Assembly: GCA_038496445.1 (NCBI GenBank)
Contig: JALMLS010000015.1
Location: forward strand, 434,001-498,000
Source: Trichosphaerium sp. ATCC 40318
Lineage: Eukaryota > Protista > Tubulinea
Length of the DNA stretch: 64,000 nucleotides
Reading direction: 5' to 3'
Positions within the stretch are counted from its first letter, which is position 1, and every line of letters begins with the position of its first letter. Both the position numbers and the translations under genes were made by a program. Shown piece after piece: positions 6,222 through 59,568 of this stretch. The notes beneath the pieces are model-generated. The model worked only from the letters and a program-made list of their open reading frames with translations. It was not told where the DNA came from and searched no databases.

Positions 6222-9200
6222 ATGTCTCTGCGAAACTTATCGCCTAGATCGGTCGATCTAGCCAATAAGGTTTGAAAATACAAAATCGTGGTAATCATCG
6301 CTCAGTTTGTTATAATAGGTTGAAGATACGCGCGTATGGATGTACCTTGCTAAAGAAAAGTCGGTGCGCGAGTGGATCAATAAAGTACTTAAAGTTAAGC
6401 TCGACAATGGTACGGTACCAAACTGCATACAGTTGTTTTCGTGTTTGCCCTTTTGGAAGTTTAATTTTTTATCCTGCGTAGATCTTGTTACAGCGTTGTC
6501 AAATGGTATTGTTGTTTGTTATTTAATGCGAGAGATCGATCGCTACTCTATTCCTAAGATACAGGAGAATCAAAAAGCTATGTACACACTAAAAGAGAAC
6601 GTACGCTTTTTTATCGATGCTTTGGCAGAGTATGGAGTACCGCGTTGGAAGTACGTTGCTTTTTTTTGTCGTTTATTTCGATTAATTTTTAAACAACGTT
6701 ATTATTCAATAGTTAGCGCTGAATAGTCGCCTATTGTTGGTATTTTAGCGCTTGTTCCAATAAGGAAAACTTGCAGTAACGTGAAAAAAAGGCACTAACA
6801 CAAACCTACGTAGGTTATTCTTTGTGAATGATCTATGGGATGGTAAGAACATTGTAAAAGTTGTAGACTGCCTGTCATGGTTTGGTAAAAAAGTGACTGA
6901 AGACGGTTTTCGCGTCCCATACGTTGAAGGCAAGGTACGTAGTACCAATTTACGGCATTTCTTTCAAGAAAAGAGTTCTGGCGATCTAATATGTTGAAGG
7001 ATGATCCTAATGAGCGTGCTACGCTTACAAAGAAGGAAATACTCAAAATAAAAAGCATGTTGACGAAAATTAACGATGAAGAGGTAAGCAACAAGAATTC
7101 ACGTGTGGTTCTTCATGTGCTCATTTGTACGCTTAGAAAAAAGGTCAAAGAAGACCAGTATCTTCTGGTTTGGTAAAAAGAAAGATGCAATACTTGCTCT
7201 CTGGTTCAGGAGTTGACTGTACGTGAAGAGATATATCAGATATTTTTTTGTAGTTTCATGCCTGTTGCTTATGTATTTTCACTTCTAGTCGAGACACTAG
7301 AAGGTAGACTATGTAAATTGCAGGGGTTAGTAAGAGGGCATTTACAGAGGAAGCGATACAGGAAATTATGCACGTTTTTTGTACTGCCTAACAATGTTGG
7401 TACTTATTAATGTATTAGTGCGTCATCAGTACACTAGAAACAGAGTAGTGGAGGAGATATTGCATACAGAAGATACATACTTGAAGGGCCTCAGTGATTG
7501 CATTGAGCACTTTTACAATCCACTTAGAGACACACTATCCGACAAACGGCCTATTTTGAACAAGAACCAGTTTCGTTGCATCTTCTCCGATTTAGAAATA
7601 ATTTTTAATCTCAATACTGCTTTCCGCAAGAAGATAAAGAGACGTGTATCAAAGTGGAGTAATACACGATGCATTGGTGATATTTTTTTGGAATCGGTAC
7701 GTGTTGGTTCTTTGCAACTCATGCTAGGACTACAATGCACTTTTATAGTAAGCGCTAAAGCGGATTTTAGGTTAAAACATTTAAAATATACACAAACTAC
7801 GTTCAAAACTTTAATACAAGTCTAACAACGTTGGATAACCTAATGACAATGAAAAATAGTAGATTTAAGCCATTTTATGACGTGCGTAAACATAAAAAAT
7901 AAAAGGTATTTTATCCAATTACTGACAAGTTACTGTTAGGAAGCAATCCAAAAGTTGCAATTAAATGATTTACAAGGCTATTTAATCATGCCTGTACAGG
8001 TACGTTGTTTTTTATTTTATTCTTTTTACAAATGACGCTTTTTGTTTCTCACTCTTATTTTAGCGTATTCCACGTACGGATTGTTTTATTTAGTGATTAA
8101 AGGAGGTCTTCAGGATTATTGACATTTTGTTTCTAGGGTACAGTCTACTTTTGCGTGATTTAGGCAAACATACTTGGGCTGGGCATCCAGATGAAGAGAA
8201 TATTAAAAACGCTGGAGTAGCTATCGATGAGATTTCTACGTACTTGAATGAAAGAGCGAGACAGTTCGAGAATACAAAGTACGGGCACAGTCTGTGAAAC
8301 TACAAGAATCTATAAAAACTAAACATAAACTTTTAGGCTTTTACTCCAATTGTCAAGAGATATCTACAACTGTGATGTTGAGCTTGTTGTACCAACACGT
8401 AGATATATCACAAAGGCTTCTTTTCAAAATAAGCTGACTGTCTACTTGTTTAATGATTTATTCCTTGTGGGAAAGTCTGATAATAAAAAGAAGCCAAACC
8501 TCGTAAAATGCAGGTACGTAAATGGAAAAGTTTTTGTTGGGCGAAAAACTGCAACGACGATTTTTTTGCTCAGCATAAAGCTTTGAAAGTCATGTCATCA
8601 GACATCCAGCACTCACGTAAGTTATAGGCAAACATTCAAGCTTGAAAACCTTGACTTGAAGACTGAGAATAAGCCAAAGCTAGAATTCTATGTATCTGTA
8701 GTTAAAGTGCTCACGGTAGTGATAAGCGAAGATACACCAGCTGACTTTGAGTCTGAATTCTTAAAGGCTAAGGAAGCCTTGAAACAACCGGAAAAGAAAG
8801 GTGATTATTTTACGCCTCTATGCAATTCCACTCACTACGTTATTAGTTGCAGTTGCAGAGGTGGCTGTTGAAGAAGAAATAACATACACACCAGAAGAGC
8901 GATTACGGATGAGAGAGAAGGAGCGTGGACGCCTTCGTGCTCTTCTAGAGAATGAACGAGCAACAATTCAGTGTACATTTATTTTTCTATCTTTTTCCTT
9001 TCTACTCTACAAAACTTGCTGTGGCTCATCATTTCACTAGGCGATGACACACCTAGAAAATCGAGGCTAATAAGCTTACTTACTATGAAAAACATTCTAA
9101 AACAGCAACTTGATACGGACACAGAAGCGAGTGAACCAATTGCCAAGGAAGCTATACATAAAGAATTACAGAGCGTAGAGTCTGAGATTAATCTTGCAAA

Positions 9201-11122: not shown

Positions 11123-12807
11123 ATGTCAGCGAGGCGAAAAGTACACGTAAGTCGGAACGTACGTATAAACTATAGTTTAACGCGAAACAGAGAACACGTG
11201 GCCAAAAACGAGAGAAAACTTGTCTTCTCCACCTCCCAGTGGAGCTACAACTCGATATTATGGACTTGGACAACAGTGCCTACATTAAATGGCCATTACT
11301 ATCTAAACAAGCCGCAATATGCTCAAGGTTTGATAGCGACTTGAAAAAACAAGGCAAATGGATGAGACACGACCGCTGTGGAAGGAAATTGGCTGAAAGG
11401 TTTTATTCTGGTGGAAAGAAACAAGGAGTTCTTAAAACTTGGCGGAAAGGAGGTTCTCAGATTAAGCAATGTTCGTATGTCAATGATATACTTGATGGTG
11501 AGTACAAGGAATGGTCAATTAAAGGATTCTTATTGAAACATTGGTTTTATAAGAATGGTAAGAAACATGGAGATAACAAAAGGTTTATGAAATCAAATGG
11601 TAAGCTGTTCAAGCTCCAACCTTATGTTAATGGGAAGATACATGGCGAGTGTAAGGAGTGGTATGATAATGGTATATTGAAGAACAAGACTATGTACATT
11701 AATGGCAAGCAAAGTGGAGAGTTTAAGTATTGGCATGAAAATGGACAAGTATCACGTGAGCGCTATTATGTTGATGGTTTCGAGACAAAGAAAGAGTTTT
11801 ATGTTACTGGCAAACCTAAATACGAGTTAGTACCTTTGGGGAAAGACGGTAGATATGAGGAAAGGGTGTGGTATGCGAATAATCAGCTAAAAAGTCAATG
11901 TGGTTATTTAAATGACTTGAAAGAAGGAGAAGAAAAATGTTGGCTTGAGAGTGGTCAGATAAAGAGCCATTGTTTTTATGCTGATGGTAATAGAGAAGGA
12001 GAAGTAAAACTATGGCATGATAATGGACACTTACACATAAAATGCTTTTATGTCAAAGGAGAATTAGAAGGTGAACGTGAGGTGTACTACAGGAATGGAG
12101 CATTATTATCGAAAGTAGTTTACAACAAAGGAAAGAAAGAAGGAGTAATGACATTTTTTCTAGATAATGGAAAATTAGAGCAAACGTGTACTTTTGTTGA
12201 TGGTAAGAAAGAAGGAGAAGAAAAGTATTGGTTTGAAAGTGGTCAATTGCAGTGCCAATGTGTTTATGTTAACAATCAGAAGGAAGGAGAAGAGAAGTTG
12301 TGGTATGAAAGTGGTCAATTACAGCGCCAAGGTGTTTATGTTAAGAATAAGAAACATGGTGAAGAAAAGTGGTGGTATGAGAGTGGTAGTTTGAGTAATC
12401 AATGTAGTCATTTTGAAGGTATTAAAGAAGGAGAAGAAAAAACCTGGTATGAGAATGGAAACTTAAAATGTATTCGTCATTATGATGACAACCACTCAGA
12501 AGGAAAGTACAAGGAAAAAGAAGAAGGAGAAGTAAAGCATTGGTTTGAAAATGGTCAATTAAAGTGCCAATACTTTTGTGTAAATGGTATGAAGGGAGGA
12601 GAAGAAAAAAGTTGGTATGAGAATGGACAACTAGAAAAACAATGTTTTTGGGTTGAAGGATATAAACACGGAGAAGAAAAGTATTGGTACCAAACTGGGG
12701 AATTACATTTTAAAATTATGTATGTTAATGGTAAGACACTAAAGGAAAATTATTGGCGTCCTGATGGCAAGCCAGTTGAACATACAAAAGTATTTGCTTG
12801 GTTTTAA
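11123..12807 (+). CDS. F-box-like + about 18 MORN-variant (YwqK-type) 24-aa repeats
   Basis: One short intron (11141 or 11147 to 11175) links the ATG to the long ORF. LLHLPVELQLDIM F-box-like helix, then repeats of GEEKxW(Y/F)E(N/S)GQL...Y(V)NGKK. Confidence 0.85.
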
Positions 12808-28312: not shown

Positions 28313-31183
28313 TCATCCAGCGTTCGCCAAGGATGTTATGTGCTTCTCTCGTGTCTCAAATGGTAAGAATGTATGGAGTGGTATAGATACAGTATCAGCC
28401 TTAGTCTTACTATAAGAGTACTCCTCAATCCTAAACACCAGAGTTAAAAAACAAGTTGACTACTATTTTTCTTGTTTTCGAGAATGAGTGTTTGTTCGCC
28501 TTTGAACGTACTTAATCTTATTGAAAGGACCATAAGTGACCGTATCAATAACAGTCAAGAAAGGTTTACCAGTCACAGCACAATTACTAACGAGCTCTCC
28601 AATGTTCATTTCTGTCCTTTTAGCAGACTAGCATACTGTCAGCAAGCAATTCTTTTTTTTTGAAAAAAAATCGCTTAAAAACGATGCCTACGTACTTGAA
28701 CAGCTGAAACATACAACCAAGGATCATTTGGTTTTACTCTTTCTGGTATTTCACTTGAAACGTTTGGAAGTGATGTAATTGAAATCATTGCTGTAGTCTA
28801 CAAATAACAAACAAAGTAAGAATTCGCAAGGAAAAAAAAATTTAACGTACAATTAAGGAAGGCTTTTTTTGGTTCAAGTATATTCCAGATCTAGTCAACT
28901 AACCATTTGATTAGCGACATAATGATAATTATATACTATAAAGCATTCGAGGTACCTTTGTGTATTCAATATGAAACTTGCTTAAGCCCTAAAGATAAAA
29001 TCGGTGAGGCTCAACACCTTCGCTTTTGTATCCGTACCTTATCTATAGGGCGAGTAATATCACATCTCATTACGAAAGGAATTACACGTACAGTGTCTCT
29101 GATGAAACAAGTACATTTGTATACTCTCATAGTGAGTACAGACTTGGCATGCCTATTGGATTAAATGAGAAAAAAAAAAACAAACAAAAAAACGCACCTT
29201 AAAAAATATGCCATTTGAGATCGTAACAAAAACTGAGGACTCCCTGGTACAGCAAGAGATCTTTTATCAAGCTTATTTGTTATGTTAGTACTTGAATAAT
29301 GCAAAAGAAAAATGACGTACATCTTGCTCAGGGAGAGTCAAAACAGTATCTACAAGTGTCAATATATTACTTGCATACCAACTATCATATCCTCCCAGAA
29401 AAAACCCCAAACTTGTGCCAAAAGGACTCGAGGGTATAAAATAGAATTCGAAATAAACCTACAATCGGATGAGCAAAACAAGTAACAAGTCCAAACAAGG
29501 AAGAAAAAGTAAATTGTCGAAAAAAATTAACCTAGGACAACGTACAGGAACCCAGCTGTGTTTTTGAAGCTCTACATGAGCTAGAAATAACTTATGTATA
29601 GTCTCATCGTCACCTACTATGACAACACGGACTGTTTTCCACCGTTTCCTAAAAAACAAAGTAAATCTCCGTTTTTCCACCCTTTTTCTTTTGGAAGTCG
29701 TACAATCCTCGATAAGACATGACCAAATCACGTAATATTGTATGTGGAGATGTCTTAGTAGAAGCTGAAGCCAACCCATGACTAGAAGTCTCTACACTAT
29801 GTACAGTAAAATGCATAGGTGTTTCATGTACACCAGCGTCAGCACATTTACTTCGTTTACGCTTTTCTTTATGTCCTTTACGCGAAGGAGACGGAGCGAT
29901 AGAAAAAATTTGTTTCTTGAGTCTAGTTAACTCAAGCTTGTAGTATTTAGGTGCATCCTTATCTCGCCTACAACAACACGTTAACACTAAGTAGACAAAA
30001 AAAATCCCAGTTAAGTTGTACGTCATAAGTGCGCGATTCATGATAGCCAGCACACGTTCGTAAATACTATCTACTTGACCCAAGGTAAGTTGTTCAAGCG
30101 ATAGTTGCTCAGGAGACATATCTAAACAACTACATAAAACGCCTAGGAGTTTGTGAGCCATTATACTTAATTCCACAAAAAAAAGAACCGAATTCTTACT
30201 TTTAATTATGCTTATTTTGGTCTTCTTTAACCCAGGTGTTTCTTCGTAAGACTGTTCTAGTATTTCACCTATATCTCGTGCATGTATTACCCTTCTATCT
30301 ATTATGACATGCGCCCTATCTTCTGGCGCTATACTACACTTGTATGAGTAAAAGAAGGCCAACTCACTAAAAACCCTTCAAAGCAGGTCCTATCAAACTC
30401 ACCCAGTCTCTGCCTGTTCCTTCAATAAGTTTAAAGCCACTGTTCTTGGCCTCAAACGGAAATCTTCTTCTAGCATAGTCTTTCGTAGAGTAAACCCTGG
30501 AGACTTCTTCTCCAGGGTTAATAGAGTGAATAACTCACGAGCAATATTACAGTATGGCTCAGGTAGTTTTGTATGCGTCCCAACAACATACAGAGCCGAC
30601 TCAATAAGTCTGCTTGAAACTAACGCTGTCTACAAAAAACAAATCATTAGGGGTAAACCCAAGCACTATGATACTTGGACAACCGCACAGTAATTTTTGT
30701 GACATATGATATAAAATGGTGTGCAATTTAATTGTACCTTGCAAAGGCATGATTTCAACATGTAAAGCATGTTAACTATTTCCCACTCTTCATGTGGTTC
30801 GTACAACATCTCGATAAGAATGCGTAACACGTGTTTCCCTTCAGATCTCTTTGAACATTCCCGTAAATACGTGTGTAGTATACAAGGGGTAACTATGAAG
30901 GTATTAGAGTGGTTTTTGGGAGTTTGCTATCAAAAAAGGCAGATAAACAGACTAAGGCCCGAGGATATAATAGATAAGCGTACGCGTGCTGGAGTAGTAA
31001 GGTAGCAATTGAGTATTTGTAATGTATCGGGCTTTGCAACAATGCTGCAAAACAGCACGTAAAGGAGGCAGTAGTACGTCGTCGCCTAGAAAACGCTTTA
31101 CCTTTAATAAAATTAGTAACAAAGAAACGTAGAATCTTATTTTCGGTTACATCGCAAACAAAAAAGGTTTCTTGTTGTCTCAT
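28313..31183 (-). CDS. PI3K-gamma (class IB) regulatory subunit p101/p87-like protein (PIK3R5/PIK3R6 family)
   Basis: Colinear motifs after splicing: LPEPYCNIARELFTLLTLEKKSPG, TVRVVIVGDD, FEFYFIP, LGFFLGGYDSWYASNIL, LLRSQMAYFLRHAKSVLTMRVY, FHIEYTKLTRSG, PFLTVID, and C-terminal IPLHTFLP. These resemble p101 blocks recalled from memory (WPVPYC..ELKAPG, LRVVVFGSD, LQFFYVP, YLGMLDPWYERNV, LPIMTF). Confidence 0.8.
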
Positions 31184-31594
31184 AGCCTTAGAGCCTCTTT
31201 TGATGTCGTGTAGGAAAGATGCACTGTTAGCTTTGTGCACATCAAGCTGGAAACGCGAACGACCTAATTTCGTGCGTGCGTAGTTCCTTAGTTGTTGTTA
31301 TTTTATTTTAAACAGACAATTGTGTAAATCTCACCTGAAAAGCATTACATTGTACGCCAATAAGATAGACGCATCGTTGTGCGCTAATAGTTTGTTATTT
31401 TGATTTTATTAGGTTGCTGTACTTTTTATTGAGTCGTCCATCAATCACTAGCGCGAACAACCTTGGATGGTAATGTTGCCAAAGACGTATAAGCGATTAG
31501 GCAATGATTGCTTTTTTCCGCACTTTCTTTGTCAAGTTAACTTATTCTTGACCGCTTCAAAACAGCTTAAAAACGCCTCAATTATTAACGCGCA
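31184..31594. promoter_or_regulatory. Probable bidirectional promoter between the p101-like gene (-) and KTI12 (+)
   Basis: About 410 bp between divergent start codons; positional inference only. Confidence 0.4.
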
Positions 31595-32916
31595 ATGCCT
31601 CTAATTATAATATGCGGATTGCCGTGCTCTGGTAAAACACAACGTGCAAAAGAGTTGGCAGATTACATAACAAATACGCTGAAAGCAACTGCGAAGGTAG
31701 TTAACGAGGAATCTCTACTGTTAGTTAAAAACCAAGTGTACCAAGGCAAGATTTCATTTTACGTTAGTATTCAGCATCAAAACGCGTCGTTAAACATGAA
31801 AAACGTTGTTTTGAACTAAAACTGTAAAACAGACTCAAAATGCGAAAAGAACGTCAGAGGATCTTTAAAAACATTCGCAGAGCGCAATACAACAAAAGAA
31901 GTATGGGTTATAGTTGACTCGTTGAATTACATAAAAGGCTTCCGTTACGAACTCTTCTGTATTGCTAGAGCATGTGGAACTAGCCATTGCTGTGTACGTT
32001 GTATTTATTGCTTTAAAAACCAAAACAAATATTTACAACACTAAAAGGTATACTGCGATGCAACAGATGAGCAAGTGAAAGAAAATAACGCAAAAAGAGC
32101 CGAAGAAGATCGCTGGGAAGACGACATGTACGGAAATTTCGCAGAATTTAAAATCTCATCAAAATGGCAGATTGAACGGCTTATTAATGCGTTTTGAGAC
32201 GCCTAATGGTAGAGCTAGATGGGATAAACCATTATTCACGTACGTGGTCTATACCAACGCGAATAAGAAAAGGAAACAAAAAGTTTTGCAACCGCTGTTG
32301 TTATGTTAGTTTTTATCTTTTAATAAGTTTCAGGATAACTAAAGATGATGAAACACCTTGTCAAACAATTGTAGATACTCTTCGTAATGTAAAAGGCCTA
32401 ACTCCTAACAGTGCAACAAAACACGTGCGTCAATATTTTACTTGTTTTTTTTTTTCTTTTTACAAGTTACAAGTTGTAAGGACTATGCGCCTGAGTACAA
32501 TTAACGTTAATTGTTTTTAGCAAAAAGTAGCAAACCCAAAATATTTATATGGCTTGGATAAAATTTCACAACAAATAGTTGACGCTATTTTGGAAGCTCA
32601 AAATACTTTACCTATGGGTTCTAATATTAAAGTACCTATAAGTGCAAAACCAGTACGTATTTACAAAAACATGTTCAAATTCTTTGCAGGTCTTTGAACG
32701 CCTTAGATTATTAGACTGTTTTTTCAGTGCTTTTTTTTTGGCATTACTTACTTGTTCTCATAGATACCTTACACAAGACGTTTTTCTCGTGTGGAGCTAC
32801 GTAAGCTTAGAAGACAATATGTTACATTATCTACATCTATAGTCAATGATAATGCAGAACGCACAGACTTACAAATCGCTAATGGTTTCGTCGGTTATCT
32901 TATATCTAACTTGTAA
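31595..32916 (+). CDS. KTI12: KTI12 (Elongator-associated P-loop ATPase)
   Basis: MPLIIICGLPCSGKT, DSKCEKNVRGSLK, VDSLNYIKGFRYELFC, RFETPNGRARWDKPLF, ELRKLRRQY. Confidence 0.95.
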
Positions 32917-55564: not shown

Positions 55565-57117
55565 TTATTCTTTTCCAGACCAATGCGAAATCAATAAATA
55601 AAAGGTGTTTGCAAAGTACCTGAACCAACCATATAAAATATTACAAAACATCTGTAATGGAAAAACAAGTGTGTTGAATGATCTTATCAATAAACCACTA
55701 CTTTGAGTACCAGTTTTCTTGTTGGTACCAAACTGTTTTTTCCTTCTTGTATTTATCATGCCAAACCATCTCTTTACCTCAGCATCTGCCTCTGCAGCGG
55801 GCTTTCCAGTCTCAACCCATTCTTTCTTGCTTATTAGCTTACCATCAACCCACATGCTTAATGATCTAAGTTGTCCATTTTCATGCCATTCCTTTCTTTC
55901 GCCGTTTTGTTTACCATTAACCCAAGTGGCTTGAGACCTGATTTGTCCGGCTGAATGCCAATCTTTGTATTCACCATGCAGTTCACCTTTGATGTAGGTG
56001 CTGTATTCTTTCAGTTGTCCATCTTCATACCACTCCTTTCTTACACCATCTATTTTATCATTGACCCAAGTTTCTTGAGAAATGAGTTGTCCGTTTTTGG
56101 ACCAGCTTTTGGTTTCACCATGCTTTTCACCATTGATAAATGGGATAGATGCAATAAGCTGTCCGTTTTCATACCATATTTTAGATTCACCATGTTGTTT
56201 GTTATCAACAAACATACACCAACACGCAAGTTGTCCATTTTCATGCCACTCCTTTCTTTCGCCGTTTTCTTTACCATTGATCCAAGTACTTTGAGCTTTA
56301 AGTTGTCCGTTTTCATGCCACTCCTTACCTTCACCATATATCTCACCATTATTAAGTACATAATCGACCTTAAGTCGGCATTTTCATACCACTCCTTTCT
56401 TTCACCATTTGGTTTACCATTGATCCAAGTGCTATGAGCTTTAACTTGTCCATTTTCATGCCACTCCTTTCGTTCACCATTTTGTATACCATTGTTCCAA
56501 GTGCTTTGAGCTTCAAGTTGCCCGTTTTTATACCACTGCTTAGCTTTGCCGTTTGGTTTACCATCAATCGCTGTGCCACGTGCCATGAGTTGGCCATTTT
56601 CATGCCACTCCTTAACTTTGCCGTTCTGTTTACCATTGACATAATTACTTTGAGATGATAGTTGCCCGTTTTCATACCACGCCTTAACTTCGCCGTTTTG
56701 TTTACCATTGACCCAAGTGATTTGAGATTTGAGGTGTCCGTTTTCATACCAGTGGGTAAATTCGCCATTTTGTTCGCCTTTGACACAGTTGCCTTGAAAA
56801 TTAAGTTGTCCGTTTTTATACCACTCTTTGACTTCTCCTTCTATTTTGCCATCGACCAACATCCATTGCGACCCAAGTTGCCCATTCTCATGCCAATATT
56901 GACATAATCCAGTTTTGCCATGTTCGTGGGAACAAACTTTTCCGCTTTTATACCATCTGATCCATTTTCCTTTCCGTTCTAATGACTCATCAAAATGAGT
57001 GTTGATTGCTGCTCTCCTCGACAATGTATGGAACTTTGTGAATGTTTTCGAGTTGAAAGTACAGATGTACTGTTGGATATCACATGGAAGATCCAACAAA
57101 GTCAAAGAAGACGACAT
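55565..57117 (-). pseudogene. F-box-like + about 15 MORN-variant repeats, frameshifted (pseudogene or sequencing error)
   Basis: LLDLPCDIQQYICTF...AAINTHFDESLERKGKWIRW parallels the 11123 gene. The repeats switch frame at about 56379; adding one base restores ENGRLKVDYVLNNGEIYGE. Confidence 0.8.
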
Positions 57118-59568
57118 TGTAAGTTCAAAAAAACTAAACAAGCGTTAGAACTGAGAAGTTAAATGGTAAACCGTATGTGCTTTTGCACAATTGTTCTCAG
57201 GGTACAGAACACGAAAAGGTCAAAAATCAAATAAATCCAAAAAAAAAAAGAAACTGCACATGAGACTGTTTTCGACACGTGCTCGGCTATTTACTGTAAA
57301 GAAGGCTGTTGCTAATGTGTATTTTGTTGACCGAAAGCAAGGTAGGTACCAAATGAGTTCACAATTTAAAGTGAGTTTAGAATGTAATATCTAATCTTGG
57401 CGTTTCTACTGCTGAATGAAGGCCTGTGTTTCTGTTGGTAGAATAGATATCCGTTCAATAATTAAAACAAAACGTAAGAATGTATGATTTAAGGGTCCGG
57501 GTTTTTAGAGCAGCGTTGACTTGTTTGTTTTTCTTTTTGTTCGCTCCTAACTCCTTGATGTGTGCTGTAATCCTGGTGGTGCTCATGATGTACGTCTGGC
57601 TACAAGCTGAGGTATGTAAATCGTTAAAACATTTTGCTGTTTCGCTAAAAAAAATCAAAATTTACTGGATCTCAATCCTACCAAAACCTACCAAGCGCTC
57701 ATAGGTCTGACAGGTATGAGCGCAATATTTTAAACCATGTCCCAACTTTTGACGTACCGCAGTGTACCGCATTTGTCAGACAAGCAAAATACTTTTTTTT
57801 TTTTACTCAATCACAAATTCTAATCACGTGCATAAATTTCTCTCATTTTTGTTTATACAGCATTGTTAACATCTTGTACCTTGTTTAGGTCATTTTTACA
57901 CAAAAGGCTTCGAATGTGTTCAGCAAGAACTGACTTGTTTCCACCCAAAACTGCTTTTTTTGTCTTTGACGCATTTCTGTACCAATCACCATTGGTTTGA
58001 GAGATAGAATTTTTTTTTTTAACCCAGAACCGGGGTGTTAAGTGAAATTAAGTCACACCATTGGCAGCGGGATCACTACTAGACACTTACACAATAGTTG
58101 TGTTTAAGTCATTGGGGTATAGGTACTCTAAGTGTTTTAGTCACAGCAATTAAATAAACTAAGTGTGTACCACAAGGTAACATTCAGTAAACCATTTTAA
58201 TAGCAACTATTGTCTACGTGGTCAAAGGCACTATTCAATGAACAACAAGTAACAGTATCATAACACATGTGTACAATGGCTTCCAACGCCCTGATTGTAT
58301 CATTTTCTAAATAAACAACTGGTATAGGTAGTCTAAGGCTTTACCACCATTGACCATTGGCAGCGAGTTTGTTTTGCTTTTTTAGTGATGTTTTTTTTTT
58401 GTTTTGTTGCCTCATGTTGCCTAGTAAACTGTGATCTGGTATCACAGTTTGCGTCTATTGAGGGATCACTTGTACCTTTTTCTATTAAGTCGTTTGGGTA
58501 TAGGTATGCTAACTGTGTTAAGTTACCGGACCCTTAAGTGTAGGGAAGGGTTTTTAGATCGCCTTTTGGCGAATAAGTACATTGATTTCTTAACCATTGT
58601 ACAGTTTGAGAATAACAATGCGTTCACGGTTTATGTTACAAATGTTGTGTTGTGGTACCGTACTTACGTTATTCCTTGTTGCGTGTGATACCTTTTTGTA
58701 TTGGTCTTTAACTTAACTGAGTTTAGCTTGCGTAACAAGTGACCTTGGAATACAAGCCTGCGTGCACCCAACGACACTTCAAAACCTCTTGATGATAGCG
58801 AAGGAATACCTAGTCCAGTATATGCCTTTTTAAAGAAATAGACATTAACAATTATTCAAGATAAAGCATCCAATGAAGTCCTTGCATTCAAAACATTTTT
58901 ACTTCTTCGCCATGACATACTGTAACACCGCCGTTAGTGTACTGAACAGGTAGCACCGTGACTTGTATCTAATATGTTCGAGCTCCTTTTTTCAAGTGAC
59001 AGCAAAGCAGCCTTCATGTAACTAATAAACTGTCACGCGAGGTCTAGTTTATTAGAAGGGTCCAACACGTCAACGACTAAAAAACCAACAGGTGGTTACA
59101 CAATAATCTAAAGAAACAGGCGGTCGTTGAAATCCGTAGTTGAACCCATGAGTTTCGCGACATCATGTAAGATACTGTGTGTATAGTAAGACACCATTGA
59201 AAAGTGATTTTGGCTTTCAGAAACTGTTGACCATTCGAATGAAAATTATCAACAAGCACGTTTTTCAGGTTTTTTCGAATTTACGGCCATGTGATAGTTT
59301 TTGCTTACTAGTACGTATGTGGTACGTTTCACAGCACTGTGTCTACTTGTTTCCGTAATATGAAGTTGTTAGCACACATTTGTGAACCACAACGAATTTT
59401 GTTTTAGTTTTCAACTACTTAGCAAAAAGTTCTCAATACAATCAAAGGTCATCCTGGGCATGAAAGGACCCAGTAGCAGCTTTCAATTTCTTTTTTTACA
59501 AGATTTACGTTGTTGCAGTTGGCTGTGAGAAAACGGAAGAAACGTTATGTCACAACATCTCTAATTAA

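What the first reader, a model, noticed from the sequence alone, without database searches (positions are those of the whole stretch)
28313..31183. PI3K-gamma adaptor p101/p87 homolog in a protist
Seen: a gene of about a dozen exons, largely invisible in the ORF track, with eight motif blocks colinear with p101 from the N-terminal helical region to the C-terminal LPxxTF motif. Known: p101 and p87 couple G-beta-gamma/Ras to p110-gamma in vertebrate leukocyte chemotaxis and are mostly described from animals. Inference: a class IB-type adaptor, and perhaps GPCR-to-PI3K coupling, predates animals and operates in an amoeboid cell. The comparison sequences were recalled from memory.
Basis: partly seen in the sequence, partly recalled or inferred. 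Interest (0 to 1): 0.78.

Follow-up and report, generated by a model that had tools for sequence, protein, structure and literature searches.

The report
Amoeba relative of PI3K-gamma adaptor p101/p84
This amoeba genome carries an intact, many-exon gene for a divergent relative of p101/p84, the helper subunits of the PI3K-gamma signalling enzyme that a 2015 published survey dated to the first vertebrates, and related genes occur across the amoebae.

Summary
On the minus strand, 31183 (ATG) to 28313 (TGA), 15-16 GT-AG exons splice into an open frame of 617-628 aa.

- **Direct match to vertebrates:** exon 4 alone passes Pfam PI3K_1B_p101 (E 1e-5). Its only PDB sequence hits are p101.
- **Match to amoebae:** the spliced protein scores 232 bits against a profile of seven amoebozoan proteins. 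Five of these are named species, from Tubulinea, Discosea and Evosea.
- **Family link to vertebrates:** that profile hits only p101 and p84 significantly in the PDB.
- **Fold:** an AlphaFold model of one family member superposes end to end on p84 (Z 27.9) and p101 (Z 21.2).

So the homology is real and the family predates animals. The one evolutionary survey found had dated it to vertebrates.

The window's copy is a long-branch member, 21-24% identical to its relatives. It keeps the helix-turn-helix segment that in p101/p84 contacts p110-gamma. It lacks two things:
- the N-terminal extension of four of the five named-species members and both extra genomic loci;
- the two-helix loop at the position of p101's G-beta-gamma-binding loop.

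A role as a class I PI3K adaptor is likely but untested. G-beta-gamma coupling is not supported for this copy.

The parts
31151..31183 (-). Exon 1, aa 1-11, with the start ATG at 31183-31181
   Evidence: First ATG that joins the downstream frame through a GTAACC...AAAG intron of 49 nt. Supported by splice logic only, with no homology support.
30984..31101 (-). Exon 2, aa 12-51, start of the helical N-terminal domain
   Evidence: The family HMM alignment begins here: HMM 148/149 aligns to aa 27/28.
30738..30892 (-). Exon 3, aa 51-102, helices equivalent to alpha2-alpha4
   Evidence: Six-frame HMM hit 30902-30738, HMM 170-226, E 0.012. Covers helices H37-53, H56-71 and H77-93 of the modelled relative in full.
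30403..30629 (-). Exon 4, aa 103-178, helix-turn-helix with the LPEPY turn and the EKKSPG motif. This is the segment equivalent to the main p110-gamma contact of p101/p84.
   Evidence: Pfam PF10486 E 9.8e-6, 24.1 bits against a cut-off of 23, profile 95-145. The only PDB hits are p101 chains 7mez_B and 8so9_B, E 0.018. Six-frame HMM hit E 8.9e-13.
30200..30333 (-). Exon 5, aa 178-223. An alternative acceptor would start it at 30366 and add 11 aa.
   Evidence: The 69-nt intron version scores higher against six of the seven full-length relatives and marginally higher against the family HMM: 232.3 versus 230.9 bits. The alternative leaves a 36-nt intron, shorter than any other.
30022..30142 (-). 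Exon 6, aa 223-263
   Evidence: Six-frame HMM hit 30164-30021, HMM 330-377, E 1.6e-4.
29704..29967 (-). Exon 7, aa 263-351, last solenoid helix followed by a basic, poorly conserved linker
   Evidence: Lies inside the first HMM stretch. The linker matches the low-confidence stretches of the model (residues 277-286 and 303-310, pLDDT under 50) and the unresolved p101 linker 311-512 (PMC8397274).
29546..29648 (-). Exon 8, aa 351-385, strand plus helix with VRVVIVGDDETIH
   Evidence: Six-frame HMM hit E 9.4e-4. The same block of the family aligns to p101 516-566 and p84 415 onward.
29321..29458 (-). Exon 9, aa 386-431, FYFIP strand and the DSWY helix
   Evidence: Six-frame HMM hit E 2e-5. The single PDB hit at E up to 10 is p84 8aj8_B, residues 479-507, E 1.3.
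29198..29271 (-). Exon 10, aa 432-456, short linker and the helix SPQFLLRSQMAYFLR
   Evidence: Second HMM stretch, 626-673, 27.4 bits.
29038..29152 (-). Exon 11, aa 456-494, first strands of the C-terminal beta sandwich
   Evidence: Six-frame HMM hit E 9.6e-5. Strands E503-533 of the model are covered in full.
28956..28988 (-). Exon 12, aa 495-505. The junction of exons 11 and 12 is where the two-helix loop of the relatives is missing.
   Evidence: Intron 11 is 49 nt. Helices H534-544 and H553-557 of the relative have 0 aligned residues.
28851..28890 (-). Optional mini-exon 13 (model C), aa 506-519
   Evidence: It splits a 158-nt outlier intron into introns of 65 and 60 nt and fills part of strand E582-599.
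28696..28790 (-). Exon 14, aa 519-550. In model B it starts at 28797.
   Evidence: Aligns to the family block with NPTxPWLE.
28512..28627 (-). Exon 15, aa 551-589, strands with the YGPF motif
   Evidence: Six-frame HMM hit 28573-28508, E 0.0094. Lies in the third HMM stretch.
28313..28430 (-). Exon 16, aa 589-628, last strand SIPLHTF and the TGA at 28315-28313
   Evidence: Aligns to the C-terminal IPxMTF(F/L)P of the relatives. In the model this strand returns to the central barrel, as p101 residues 867-877 do.

Best explanation
The locus is an intact nuclear gene of an amoebozoan. It encodes a divergent member of the p101/p84 (PIK3R5/PIK3R6) family.

[quoted passage not shown] The last two have the sphingosine-kinase/diacylglycerol-kinase fold, here without a recognisable nucleotide motif.

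The most likely function is that of a non-catalytic partner of a class I PI3K catalytic subunit. It would dock through the loops of the N-terminal helices onto the C2 domain and its flanking linkers, as p101 and p84 do. It would thereby stabilise or position the kinase at the membrane.

- **Shown:** the gene structure; the homology; the conservation of the helix-turn-helix segment and of almost all secondary-structure elements.
- **Inferred:** binding to a PI3K.
- **Unlikely for this copy:** direct G-beta-gamma capture of the p101 kind, because the corresponding loop is almost absent. In behaviour it would be nearer to p84, which depends on Ras and on the G-beta-gamma site of the catalytic subunit.

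My confidence by step: homology about 0.95, PI3K adaptor role about 0.6, G-beta-gamma binding by this protein about 0.2.
For: **Gene model**
- An open 617-628 aa frame over 15-16 canonical exons.
- An unbiased six-frame scan finds only this locus, with hits in colinear order.

**Direct link to the vertebrate family**
- Pfam PF10486 on exon 4: E 9.8e-6, above the gathering score.
- p101 chains are the only PDB hits of exon 4.
- p84 is the only PDB hit of exon 9.

**Link through relatives**
- 136 bits to the Soliformovum protein, and 81-120 bits to the six other full-length relatives.
- 232 bits to their HMM over HMM positions 149-836.
- Six of the seven profile members (eight of the ten sequences retrieved) pass PF10486 at E 3e-8 to 1e-11; the Acytostelium protein falls below the cut-off.
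- Their profile hits p101 (1.6e-7) and p84 (6.3e-6) in the PDB, with nothing else below E 1, in four colinear pieces.

**Fold of the relative P0011** (pLDDT 72, pTM 0.75)
- Foldseek: p84 E 6.9e-25, p101 E 1.6e-20.
- VIA-align: p84 Z 27.9 over 529 residues, p101 Z 21.2 over 508 residues. Both run end to end.
- ESM Atlas: the PIK3R5 cluster, TM 0.68.

**Coverage**
- The window protein covers 34 of that model's 37 helices and strands.

**Interface**
- The best-conserved block is the alpha5-turn-alpha6 segment.
- The loops alpha3-alpha4 and alpha5-alpha6 are the main p110-gamma contact of both p101 and p84 (PMC10068899; PMC8397274).
Against: - No transcript evidence: no RNA run was listed.
- The full spliced protein could not be handed to Pfam or AlphaFold. 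The fold evidence therefore comes from a relative that is 23% identical.
- The window protein sits on a very long branch: 2.95 changes per site against a median of 0.78.
- It has L in place of the family-invariant W of the WPxP turn.
- It lacks the N-terminal extension, which is conserved in four named relatives and in loci L001 and L002.
- It lacks the two-helix loop of the sandwich.
- Whether this genome has a class I PI3K with a matching surface was not examined.
- Published reviews say amoebozoan class I PI3Ks lack the adaptor-binding domain and have no identified regulatory subunits (PMC6563779).
Confidence: 0.62

Rival explanations
1. It is a true homolog that has left the PI3K pathway. 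It would be a scaffold or pseudo-enzyme of the sphingosine-kinase/diacylglycerol-kinase fold, working with some other partner.
For: - Very long branch and only 21-24% identity to the other amoebozoan members.
- Loss of the N-terminal extension and of the sandwich loop.
- W to L change in the interface turn.
- The central and C-terminal domains of the family resemble sphingosine kinase 1 as strongly as they resemble p101: Z 23.6 versus 21.2.
- The same fold is reused in PACS-1.
Against: - The N-terminal helical domain, found only in p84/p101 among the structural matches, is retained helix for helix.
- Its contact segment is the most conserved block of the whole protein.
Confidence: 0.25
2. It is a decaying or silent paralog of a canonical copy that lies elsewhere in this genome.
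For: - No RNA run could be listed.
- The branch is long and two family features are lost.
- Two other genomic loci, L001 and L002, carry canonical copies with every HMM segment. This shows what a standard gene looks like.
Against: - 1.85-1.9 kb of coding sequence over 15-16 exons has no frameshift and no stop, and every splice site is canonical.
- Conserved core motifs are kept.
- No second copy lies in this window. The rest of the genome was not searched.
Confidence: 0.08
3. It is an active lipid kinase of the sphingosine-kinase/diacylglycerol-kinase type, not an adaptor.
For: - The fold match to sphingosine kinase 1, YegS and DgkB is strong, Z 20-24.
- A G-x-D-x-T-x-H segment sits where these kinases have their glycine-rich GGDG/SGDG motif. 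That motif is recalled from memory and was not tested here.
Against: - No Pfam DAGK_cat match appears on the window pieces or on any relative.
- A sequence search of the central domain finds p101 only.
- The window has GDDET instead of a glycine-rich loop.
Confidence: 0.03

Closest known systems
p84/p87 (PIK3R6), regulatory subunit of PI3K-gamma; structure 8aj8_B
   Same: - The same three-domain architecture end to end in the modelled relative: Z 27.9, 529 of 558 residues aligned; Foldseek E 6.9e-25.
- Shared sequence blocks in the helical domain and around DxWY.
[quoted passage not shown]
   Different: - About 16% identity.
- The window protein is shorter, 617-628 aa versus 754 aa, with short linkers.
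- Binding to a catalytic subunit is untested.
p101 (PIK3R5), G-beta-gamma-sensitive adaptor of PI3K-gamma; structures 7mez_B and 8so9-8soe
   Same: - Best sequence match: Pfam PF10486 and the PDB hits.
- Colinear blocks from the alpha5-alpha6 turn to the first sandwich strands.
- A C-terminal strand that returns to the central domain.
- Fold match Z 21.2.
   Different: - The p101 loop 699-724, with the KRL helix that docks on G-beta, corresponds to only 8 residues here.
- The long disordered linkers of p101 (311-512 and others) are much shorter here.
Canonical amoebozoan p101-like proteins: Soliformovum, Cavostelium, Echinamoeba, Luapeleamoeba, Acytostelium XP_012758263.1 (annotated 'hypothetical protein'), two metagenome proteins, and loci L001/L002
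   Same: The same family at 232 bits. The order of motifs is the same, from the helical domain to the C-terminal IPxMTF.
   Different: - They are 25-60% identical to each other but only 21-24% to the window protein.
- Four named members and both genomic loci carry a conserved N-terminal extension of about 150 aa, which the window gene lacks. All seven full-length relatives carry the two-helix sandwich loop, which the window gene also lacks.
Sphingosine kinase / diacylglycerol kinase / YegS / NAD kinase fold
   Same: The central alpha/beta domain plus the beta sandwich superpose at Z 14-24. This was already noted for p101 (PMC8397274).
   Different: These kinases have no N-terminal helical domain. 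Sequence similarity is undetectable. No nucleotide motif is recognisable.

Membership tests
p101/p84 (Pfam PF10486, PI3K_1B_p101) | Sequence match to the family profile above its curated cut-off | tested here: met
   Exon 4 alone scores 24.1 bits against a cut-off of 23, E 9.8e-6. This is marginal because only one exon could be scored. The spliced protein has no reference and was not scanned. Relatives joined to it at 81-136 bits score 31-44 bits, apart from Acytostelium at 16.5 bits, below the cut-off.
p101/p84 (Pfam PF10486, PI3K_1B_p101) | Three-domain architecture: helical solenoid, alpha/beta domain, C-terminal beta sandwich, with the last strand returning to the central domain | tested here: met
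   Met for the relative P0011. For the window protein it is met by alignment only: 34 of 37 elements are covered. No model of the window protein itself was made.
p101/p84 (Pfam PF10486, PI3K_1B_p101) | Conserved N-terminal interface loops (alpha3-alpha4, alpha5-alpha6) that contact the C2 domain and linkers of p110-gamma | tested here: inconclusive
   The alpha5-turn-alpha6 block is the best-conserved segment. However, the turn reads LPEPY instead of WPxPY. Contact residues could not be mapped one by one without a full p101 sequence in hand.
p101/p84 (Pfam PF10486, PI3K_1B_p101) | Forms a heterodimer with a class I PI3K catalytic subunit | not testable with these tools
   No multimer prediction was possible and the rest of the genome was out of reach. 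Another window of this genome is noted as holding a PI3K-family kinase; this was not checked.
p101 subtype (G-beta-gamma-binding adaptor) | Helical element in a loop of the C-terminal domain that docks on G-beta: KRL 711-713 (PMC10187307), or the beta8-beta9 helices (PMC10068899) | tested here: not met
   The positionally equivalent loop is 8 residues long in the window protein and 34 in P0011. It is flanked by a 49-nt intron. No other helical insertion appears in the sandwich of the model. The loop equivalence rests on a weak HMM alignment (fourth piece) together with strand order.
Sphingosine/diacylglycerol kinase catalytic family (PF00781) | Profile match and glycine-rich nucleotide motif | tested here: not met
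   No PF00781 hit at E up to 1 on the window pieces, nor at the thresholds used (0.1 and 0.01) on the relatives. Only the fold is shared.

The most novel reading that the evidence does not exclude
p101/p84-type subunits are ancestral partners of class I PI3Ks. On this reading they were already present in the common ancestor of amoebae and animals. Amoebozoan class I PI3Ks, long described as lacking regulatory subunits, would then work as heterodimers. The canonical amoebozoan members carry a two-helix loop at the very position of p101's G-beta-docking loop, so they could capture G-beta-gamma. This window's copy lost that loop and would be a p84-like, Ras-dependent variant.
Probability: 0.35. 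Interest if true: 0.8.

Novelty: new member of a known kind. Interest (0 to 1): 0.64.

Why it matters
The only evolutionary study of these subunits that I found concluded that p101 and p87 arose in vertebrates. It asked how class IB-type kinases are regulated elsewhere (PMC4617754). A 2019 review states that Dictyostelium and Entamoeba class I PI3Ks have no identified regulatory subunits (PMC6563779).

Homologs in all three amoebozoan phyla, plus this divergent copy, imply descent from the common ancestor of amoebae and animals, unless the gene was transferred early between the lineages. They offer a concrete candidate for the missing partner of amoebozoan PI3Ks in chemotaxis, macropinocytosis and phagocytosis.

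The family also looks closer to its sphingosine-kinase-like ancestor than the vertebrate proteins do. That helps to trace how a lipid-kinase fold became a signalling adaptor.

One thing tempers this. Public databases already carry automatic PF10486 marks on several of these amoebozoan proteins. The advance is therefore recognition and interpretation, not a new kind of protein.

Tried and rejected
- **RNA evidence.** No sequencing run could be listed for the locus.
- **Big protein search with exon 4.** It gave only four hits and no self hit. One of them, P0004, is a repeat protein with no p101 signal and is a false positive.
- **Word searches.** Two of the three were capped at 8000 scored candidates, probably because of the low-complexity N-rich stretches in the query. 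The Acytostelium protein was missed in the region search. Absence of Dictyostelium discoideum, Acanthamoeba or non-amoebozoan hits therefore means nothing.
- **Per-exon PDB searches.** Exons 8, 11 and 16 gave no p101/p84 hit.
- **Gene model A.** The version with a 36-nt intron 4 was set aside.
- **The mini-exon 28890-28851.** It could be neither confirmed nor rejected by score.
- **Sequence link to sphingosine kinase.** A search with the central domain found none.
- **Spliced protein.** It has no reference, so Pfam, AlphaFold and Foldseek were not run on it.
- **Vertebrate p101/p84 sequences.** No full sequence could be fetched as a protein id. No joint tree and no residue-level interface mapping was made.
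- **The tree.** It cannot place the window protein because of its long branch.
Full report
**What is there**

The minus strand between 31183 and 28313 holds a gene that is almost invisible to an ORF finder. Its longest ORF is 237 aa. I read the strand directly and joined the open stretches found through GT-AG introns.

The result is an uninterrupted frame from the ATG at 31183 to the TGA at 28315-28313. There are 15 exons in model B, or 16 in model C, which adds a 40-nt mini-exon at 28890-28851. In model C the introns are 45-108 nt long. Seven of the 15 donors read GTACGT.

Two details stay open without cDNA:
- **The intron 4 acceptor.** The choice is 30334 or 30367. The first scores better against six of the seven full-length relatives, and it avoids a 36-nt intron.
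- **The mini-exon.** It turns a 158-nt outlier intron into two ordinary ones and fills part of a predicted strand. It does not change the profile score.

No RNA run could be listed for the locus, so expression is unknown and read laying was not used.

**Is it more than chance?**

Yes. Of ten ORF pieces scanned against Pfam, exon 4 alone hits PF10486 (PI3K_1B_p101). The hit has E 9.8e-6 and 24.1 bits, just above the curated cut-off of 23, at profile positions 95-145.

The same 76 residues find only p101 chains in the whole PDB at E up to 10. Exon 9 finds only p84.

I built an HMM from seven amoebozoan relatives and scanned every stop-to-stop fragment of all six frames of the 64-kb window. The seven best hits (E 9e-13 to 0.012) all lie on the minus strand between 30902 and 28508, in colinear order. 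The next hit has E 5.3. This test does not depend on my splice model.

**Relatives**

A full HMMER pass with exon 4 over 1.84 billion representative proteins gave four hits and no self hit. Two are single exons called on eukaryotic genomic contigs, L001 and L002. One is a 700-aa protein. One is a false positive.

Word searches seeded with the 700-aa protein added six more proteins. Exact look-up names five source species:
- Soliformovum irregulare and Cavostelium apophysatum (Evosea, Variosea);
- Acytostelium subglobosum (a dictyostelid, annotated 'hypothetical protein');
- Echinamoeba exundans (Tubulinea);
- Luapeleamoeba hula (Discosea).

The lineages of the four named apart from Acytostelium were checked. 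The family therefore spans all three amoebozoan phyla.

The two genomic contigs each carry a complete multi-exon canonical gene, of which gene callers had seen only fragments.

The spliced window protein scores 136 bits against the Soliformovum protein and 81-120 bits against the other full-length relatives. It scores 232 bits against their HMM, in three stretches covering HMM positions 149-836.

**Link to vertebrate p101/p84**

Most of the amoebozoan proteins pass PF10486 at E 3e-8 to 1e-11, always over the N-terminal helical part; the Acytostelium protein falls below the cut-off.

A profile of seven of them hits p101 (E 1.6e-7) and p84 (E 6.3e-6) in the PDB, and nothing else below E 1. The p101 alignment comes in four colinear pieces:
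- the alpha5-alpha6 block;
- the strand pair VVxGxD...FFxxP;
- the DxWY helix;
- the first sandwich strands.

An AlphaFold2 model of the Echinamoeba protein has pLDDT 72 and pTM 0.75. Its structural matches are:
- **Foldseek:** p84 at E 6.9e-25 and p101 at about 1e-20, well ahead of the next family, sphingosine kinase at 3e-8.
- **VIA-align:** Z 27.9 to p84 (529 of 558 residues, model 4-696 on chain 4-756) and Z 21.2 to p101 (model 8-696 on chain 11-877).
- **ESM Atlas:** a PIK3R5 cluster is the nearest model, at TM 0.68.

Only p84 and p101 match the N-terminal helical domain as well. The central and C-terminal domains also resemble sphingosine kinase 1, YegS and DgkB at Z 20-24. The authors of the p101 structure had noted this for p101 (PMC8397274).

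**How the window protein compares**

Aligned to the modelled relative, it covers 34 of 37 helices and strands. It is nevertheless an outlier:
- It is 21-24% identical to every relative, while they share 25-60% with each other.
- Its terminal branch is 2.95 changes per site against a median of 0.78.
- It lacks the conserved N-terminal extension of about 150 residues found in four named members and both genomic loci. Nothing matching that extension exists in the window, and the upstream neighbour, a KTI12 gene on the other strand, starts 411 nt upstream of the ATG. This makes its N-terminus similar in length to that of p101.
- It lacks a two-helix insertion in the beta sandwich. The window has 8 residues where the model has 34. 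The intron at that point is 49 nt, so no exon is hidden there.
- The turn of the interface block reads LPEPY, where every relative and p101 have WPxPY or WPxP.

**Likely mechanism**

[quoted passage not shown] The alpha5-turn-alpha6 block is the best-conserved part of the window protein and of the whole family. I therefore think the most likely role is that of a non-catalytic partner of a class I PI3K. This step is inferred, not shown.

G-beta-gamma coupling is a separate matter. In the cryo-EM structures, G-beta-gamma docks on a flexible loop of the p101 C-terminal domain that holds a short helix, 709-713, with the KRL motif (PMC10187307). p84 lacks a G-beta-gamma site.

By strand order, and by the admittedly weak fourth piece of the HMM alignment, that p101 loop (about 699-724) corresponds to the two-helix insertion of the canonical amoebozoan proteins. 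That insertion is the element missing from the window protein. For the canonical amoebozoan members the idea remains open and attractive.

**Organism**

I could not name the organism. Several things make 'protist' safe:
- the short introns and the donor motif;
- the fact that all significant relatives are amoebozoan;
- earlier notes of this scan that call the genome an amoeba (not checked by me).

**Novelty**

In the paper library I found no description of amoebozoan p101/p84 homologs.
- The one evolutionary study concluded that the two subunits appeared in vertebrates (PMC4617754).
- A 2019 review says Dictyostelium and Entamoeba class I PI3Ks have no identified regulatory subunits (PMC6563779).

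On the other hand, the public protein collection already carries automatic PF10486 marks on several of these proteins. The thing is thus a new, divergent member of a known family in an unexpected lineage, not a new kind of system.

**Limits**

- The spliced protein has no reference. Pfam, AlphaFold and fold searches were therefore run on exon pieces or on relatives, not on the whole protein.
- No full vertebrate sequence was available as an id, so there is no joint tree and no residue-level interface map.
- The rest of the genome was out of reach. That includes any canonical paralog, PI3K catalytic genes and G-protein genes.
- The word searches were too insensitive to say anything about absence in other taxa.

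Noticed in passing
window 28313-31183, introns: Seven of the 15 intron donors read GTACGT, and five more begin GTAC. This is a strong, unusual 5' splice-site consensus for this genome. Introns cluster at 45-70 nt.
   Followed up: partly
window 31595-31816 (+): The first exon of a KTI12 gene (Pfam PF08433, E 1.7e-12) is transcribed divergently from the p101-like gene. The shared upstream region is 411 nt long (31184-31594).
   Followed up: partly
L001:2812-5808 and L002:4287-7537: Two eukaryotic genomic contigs from public runs (SRR28285721, SRR10663366) each hold a complete canonical amoebozoan p101-like gene of 12-13 exons, covering HMM positions 2-839. The gene callers had recorded only single exons (61 and 121 aa).
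   Followed up: partly
P0010, P0006, P0007, P0008 N-termini; L001:2812-3487: Canonical amoebozoan members share a conserved N-terminal extension of about 150 aa. It has no counterpart in the window gene, and by the alignment offsets none in vertebrate p101 either. Its fold and role are unknown.
   Followed up: no
window 29546-29648 (exon 8) and the aligned block in the relatives: The strand-helix block reads G-[GND]-D-x-[TA]-x-H (GGDNTLH in P0003, GDDETIH in the window). It sits where sphingosine and diacylglycerol kinases have their glycine-rich motif with the catalytic Asp. That motif is recalled from memory. The amoebozoan proteins look closer to the kinase ancestor than p101 (GSDRISG) does. 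A sequence search found no kinase.
   Followed up: partly
model m448b9ea72b32 (P0011); P0006: The C-terminal domain of PACS-1 sorting proteins is the next structural neighbour after p101 in the ESM Atlas, at TM 0.39-0.46. It also gives a weak Pfam hit on the Cavostelium protein, E 0.0016. This hints that PACS proteins share the same kinase-derived fold.
   Followed up: no
window 11239-12807 (+), 55565-57141 (-): Long single-exon ORFs made of MORN/YwqK-like repeats (…GxxxGxxKxWxxNGQL…) occur at two places in the window.
   Followed up: no
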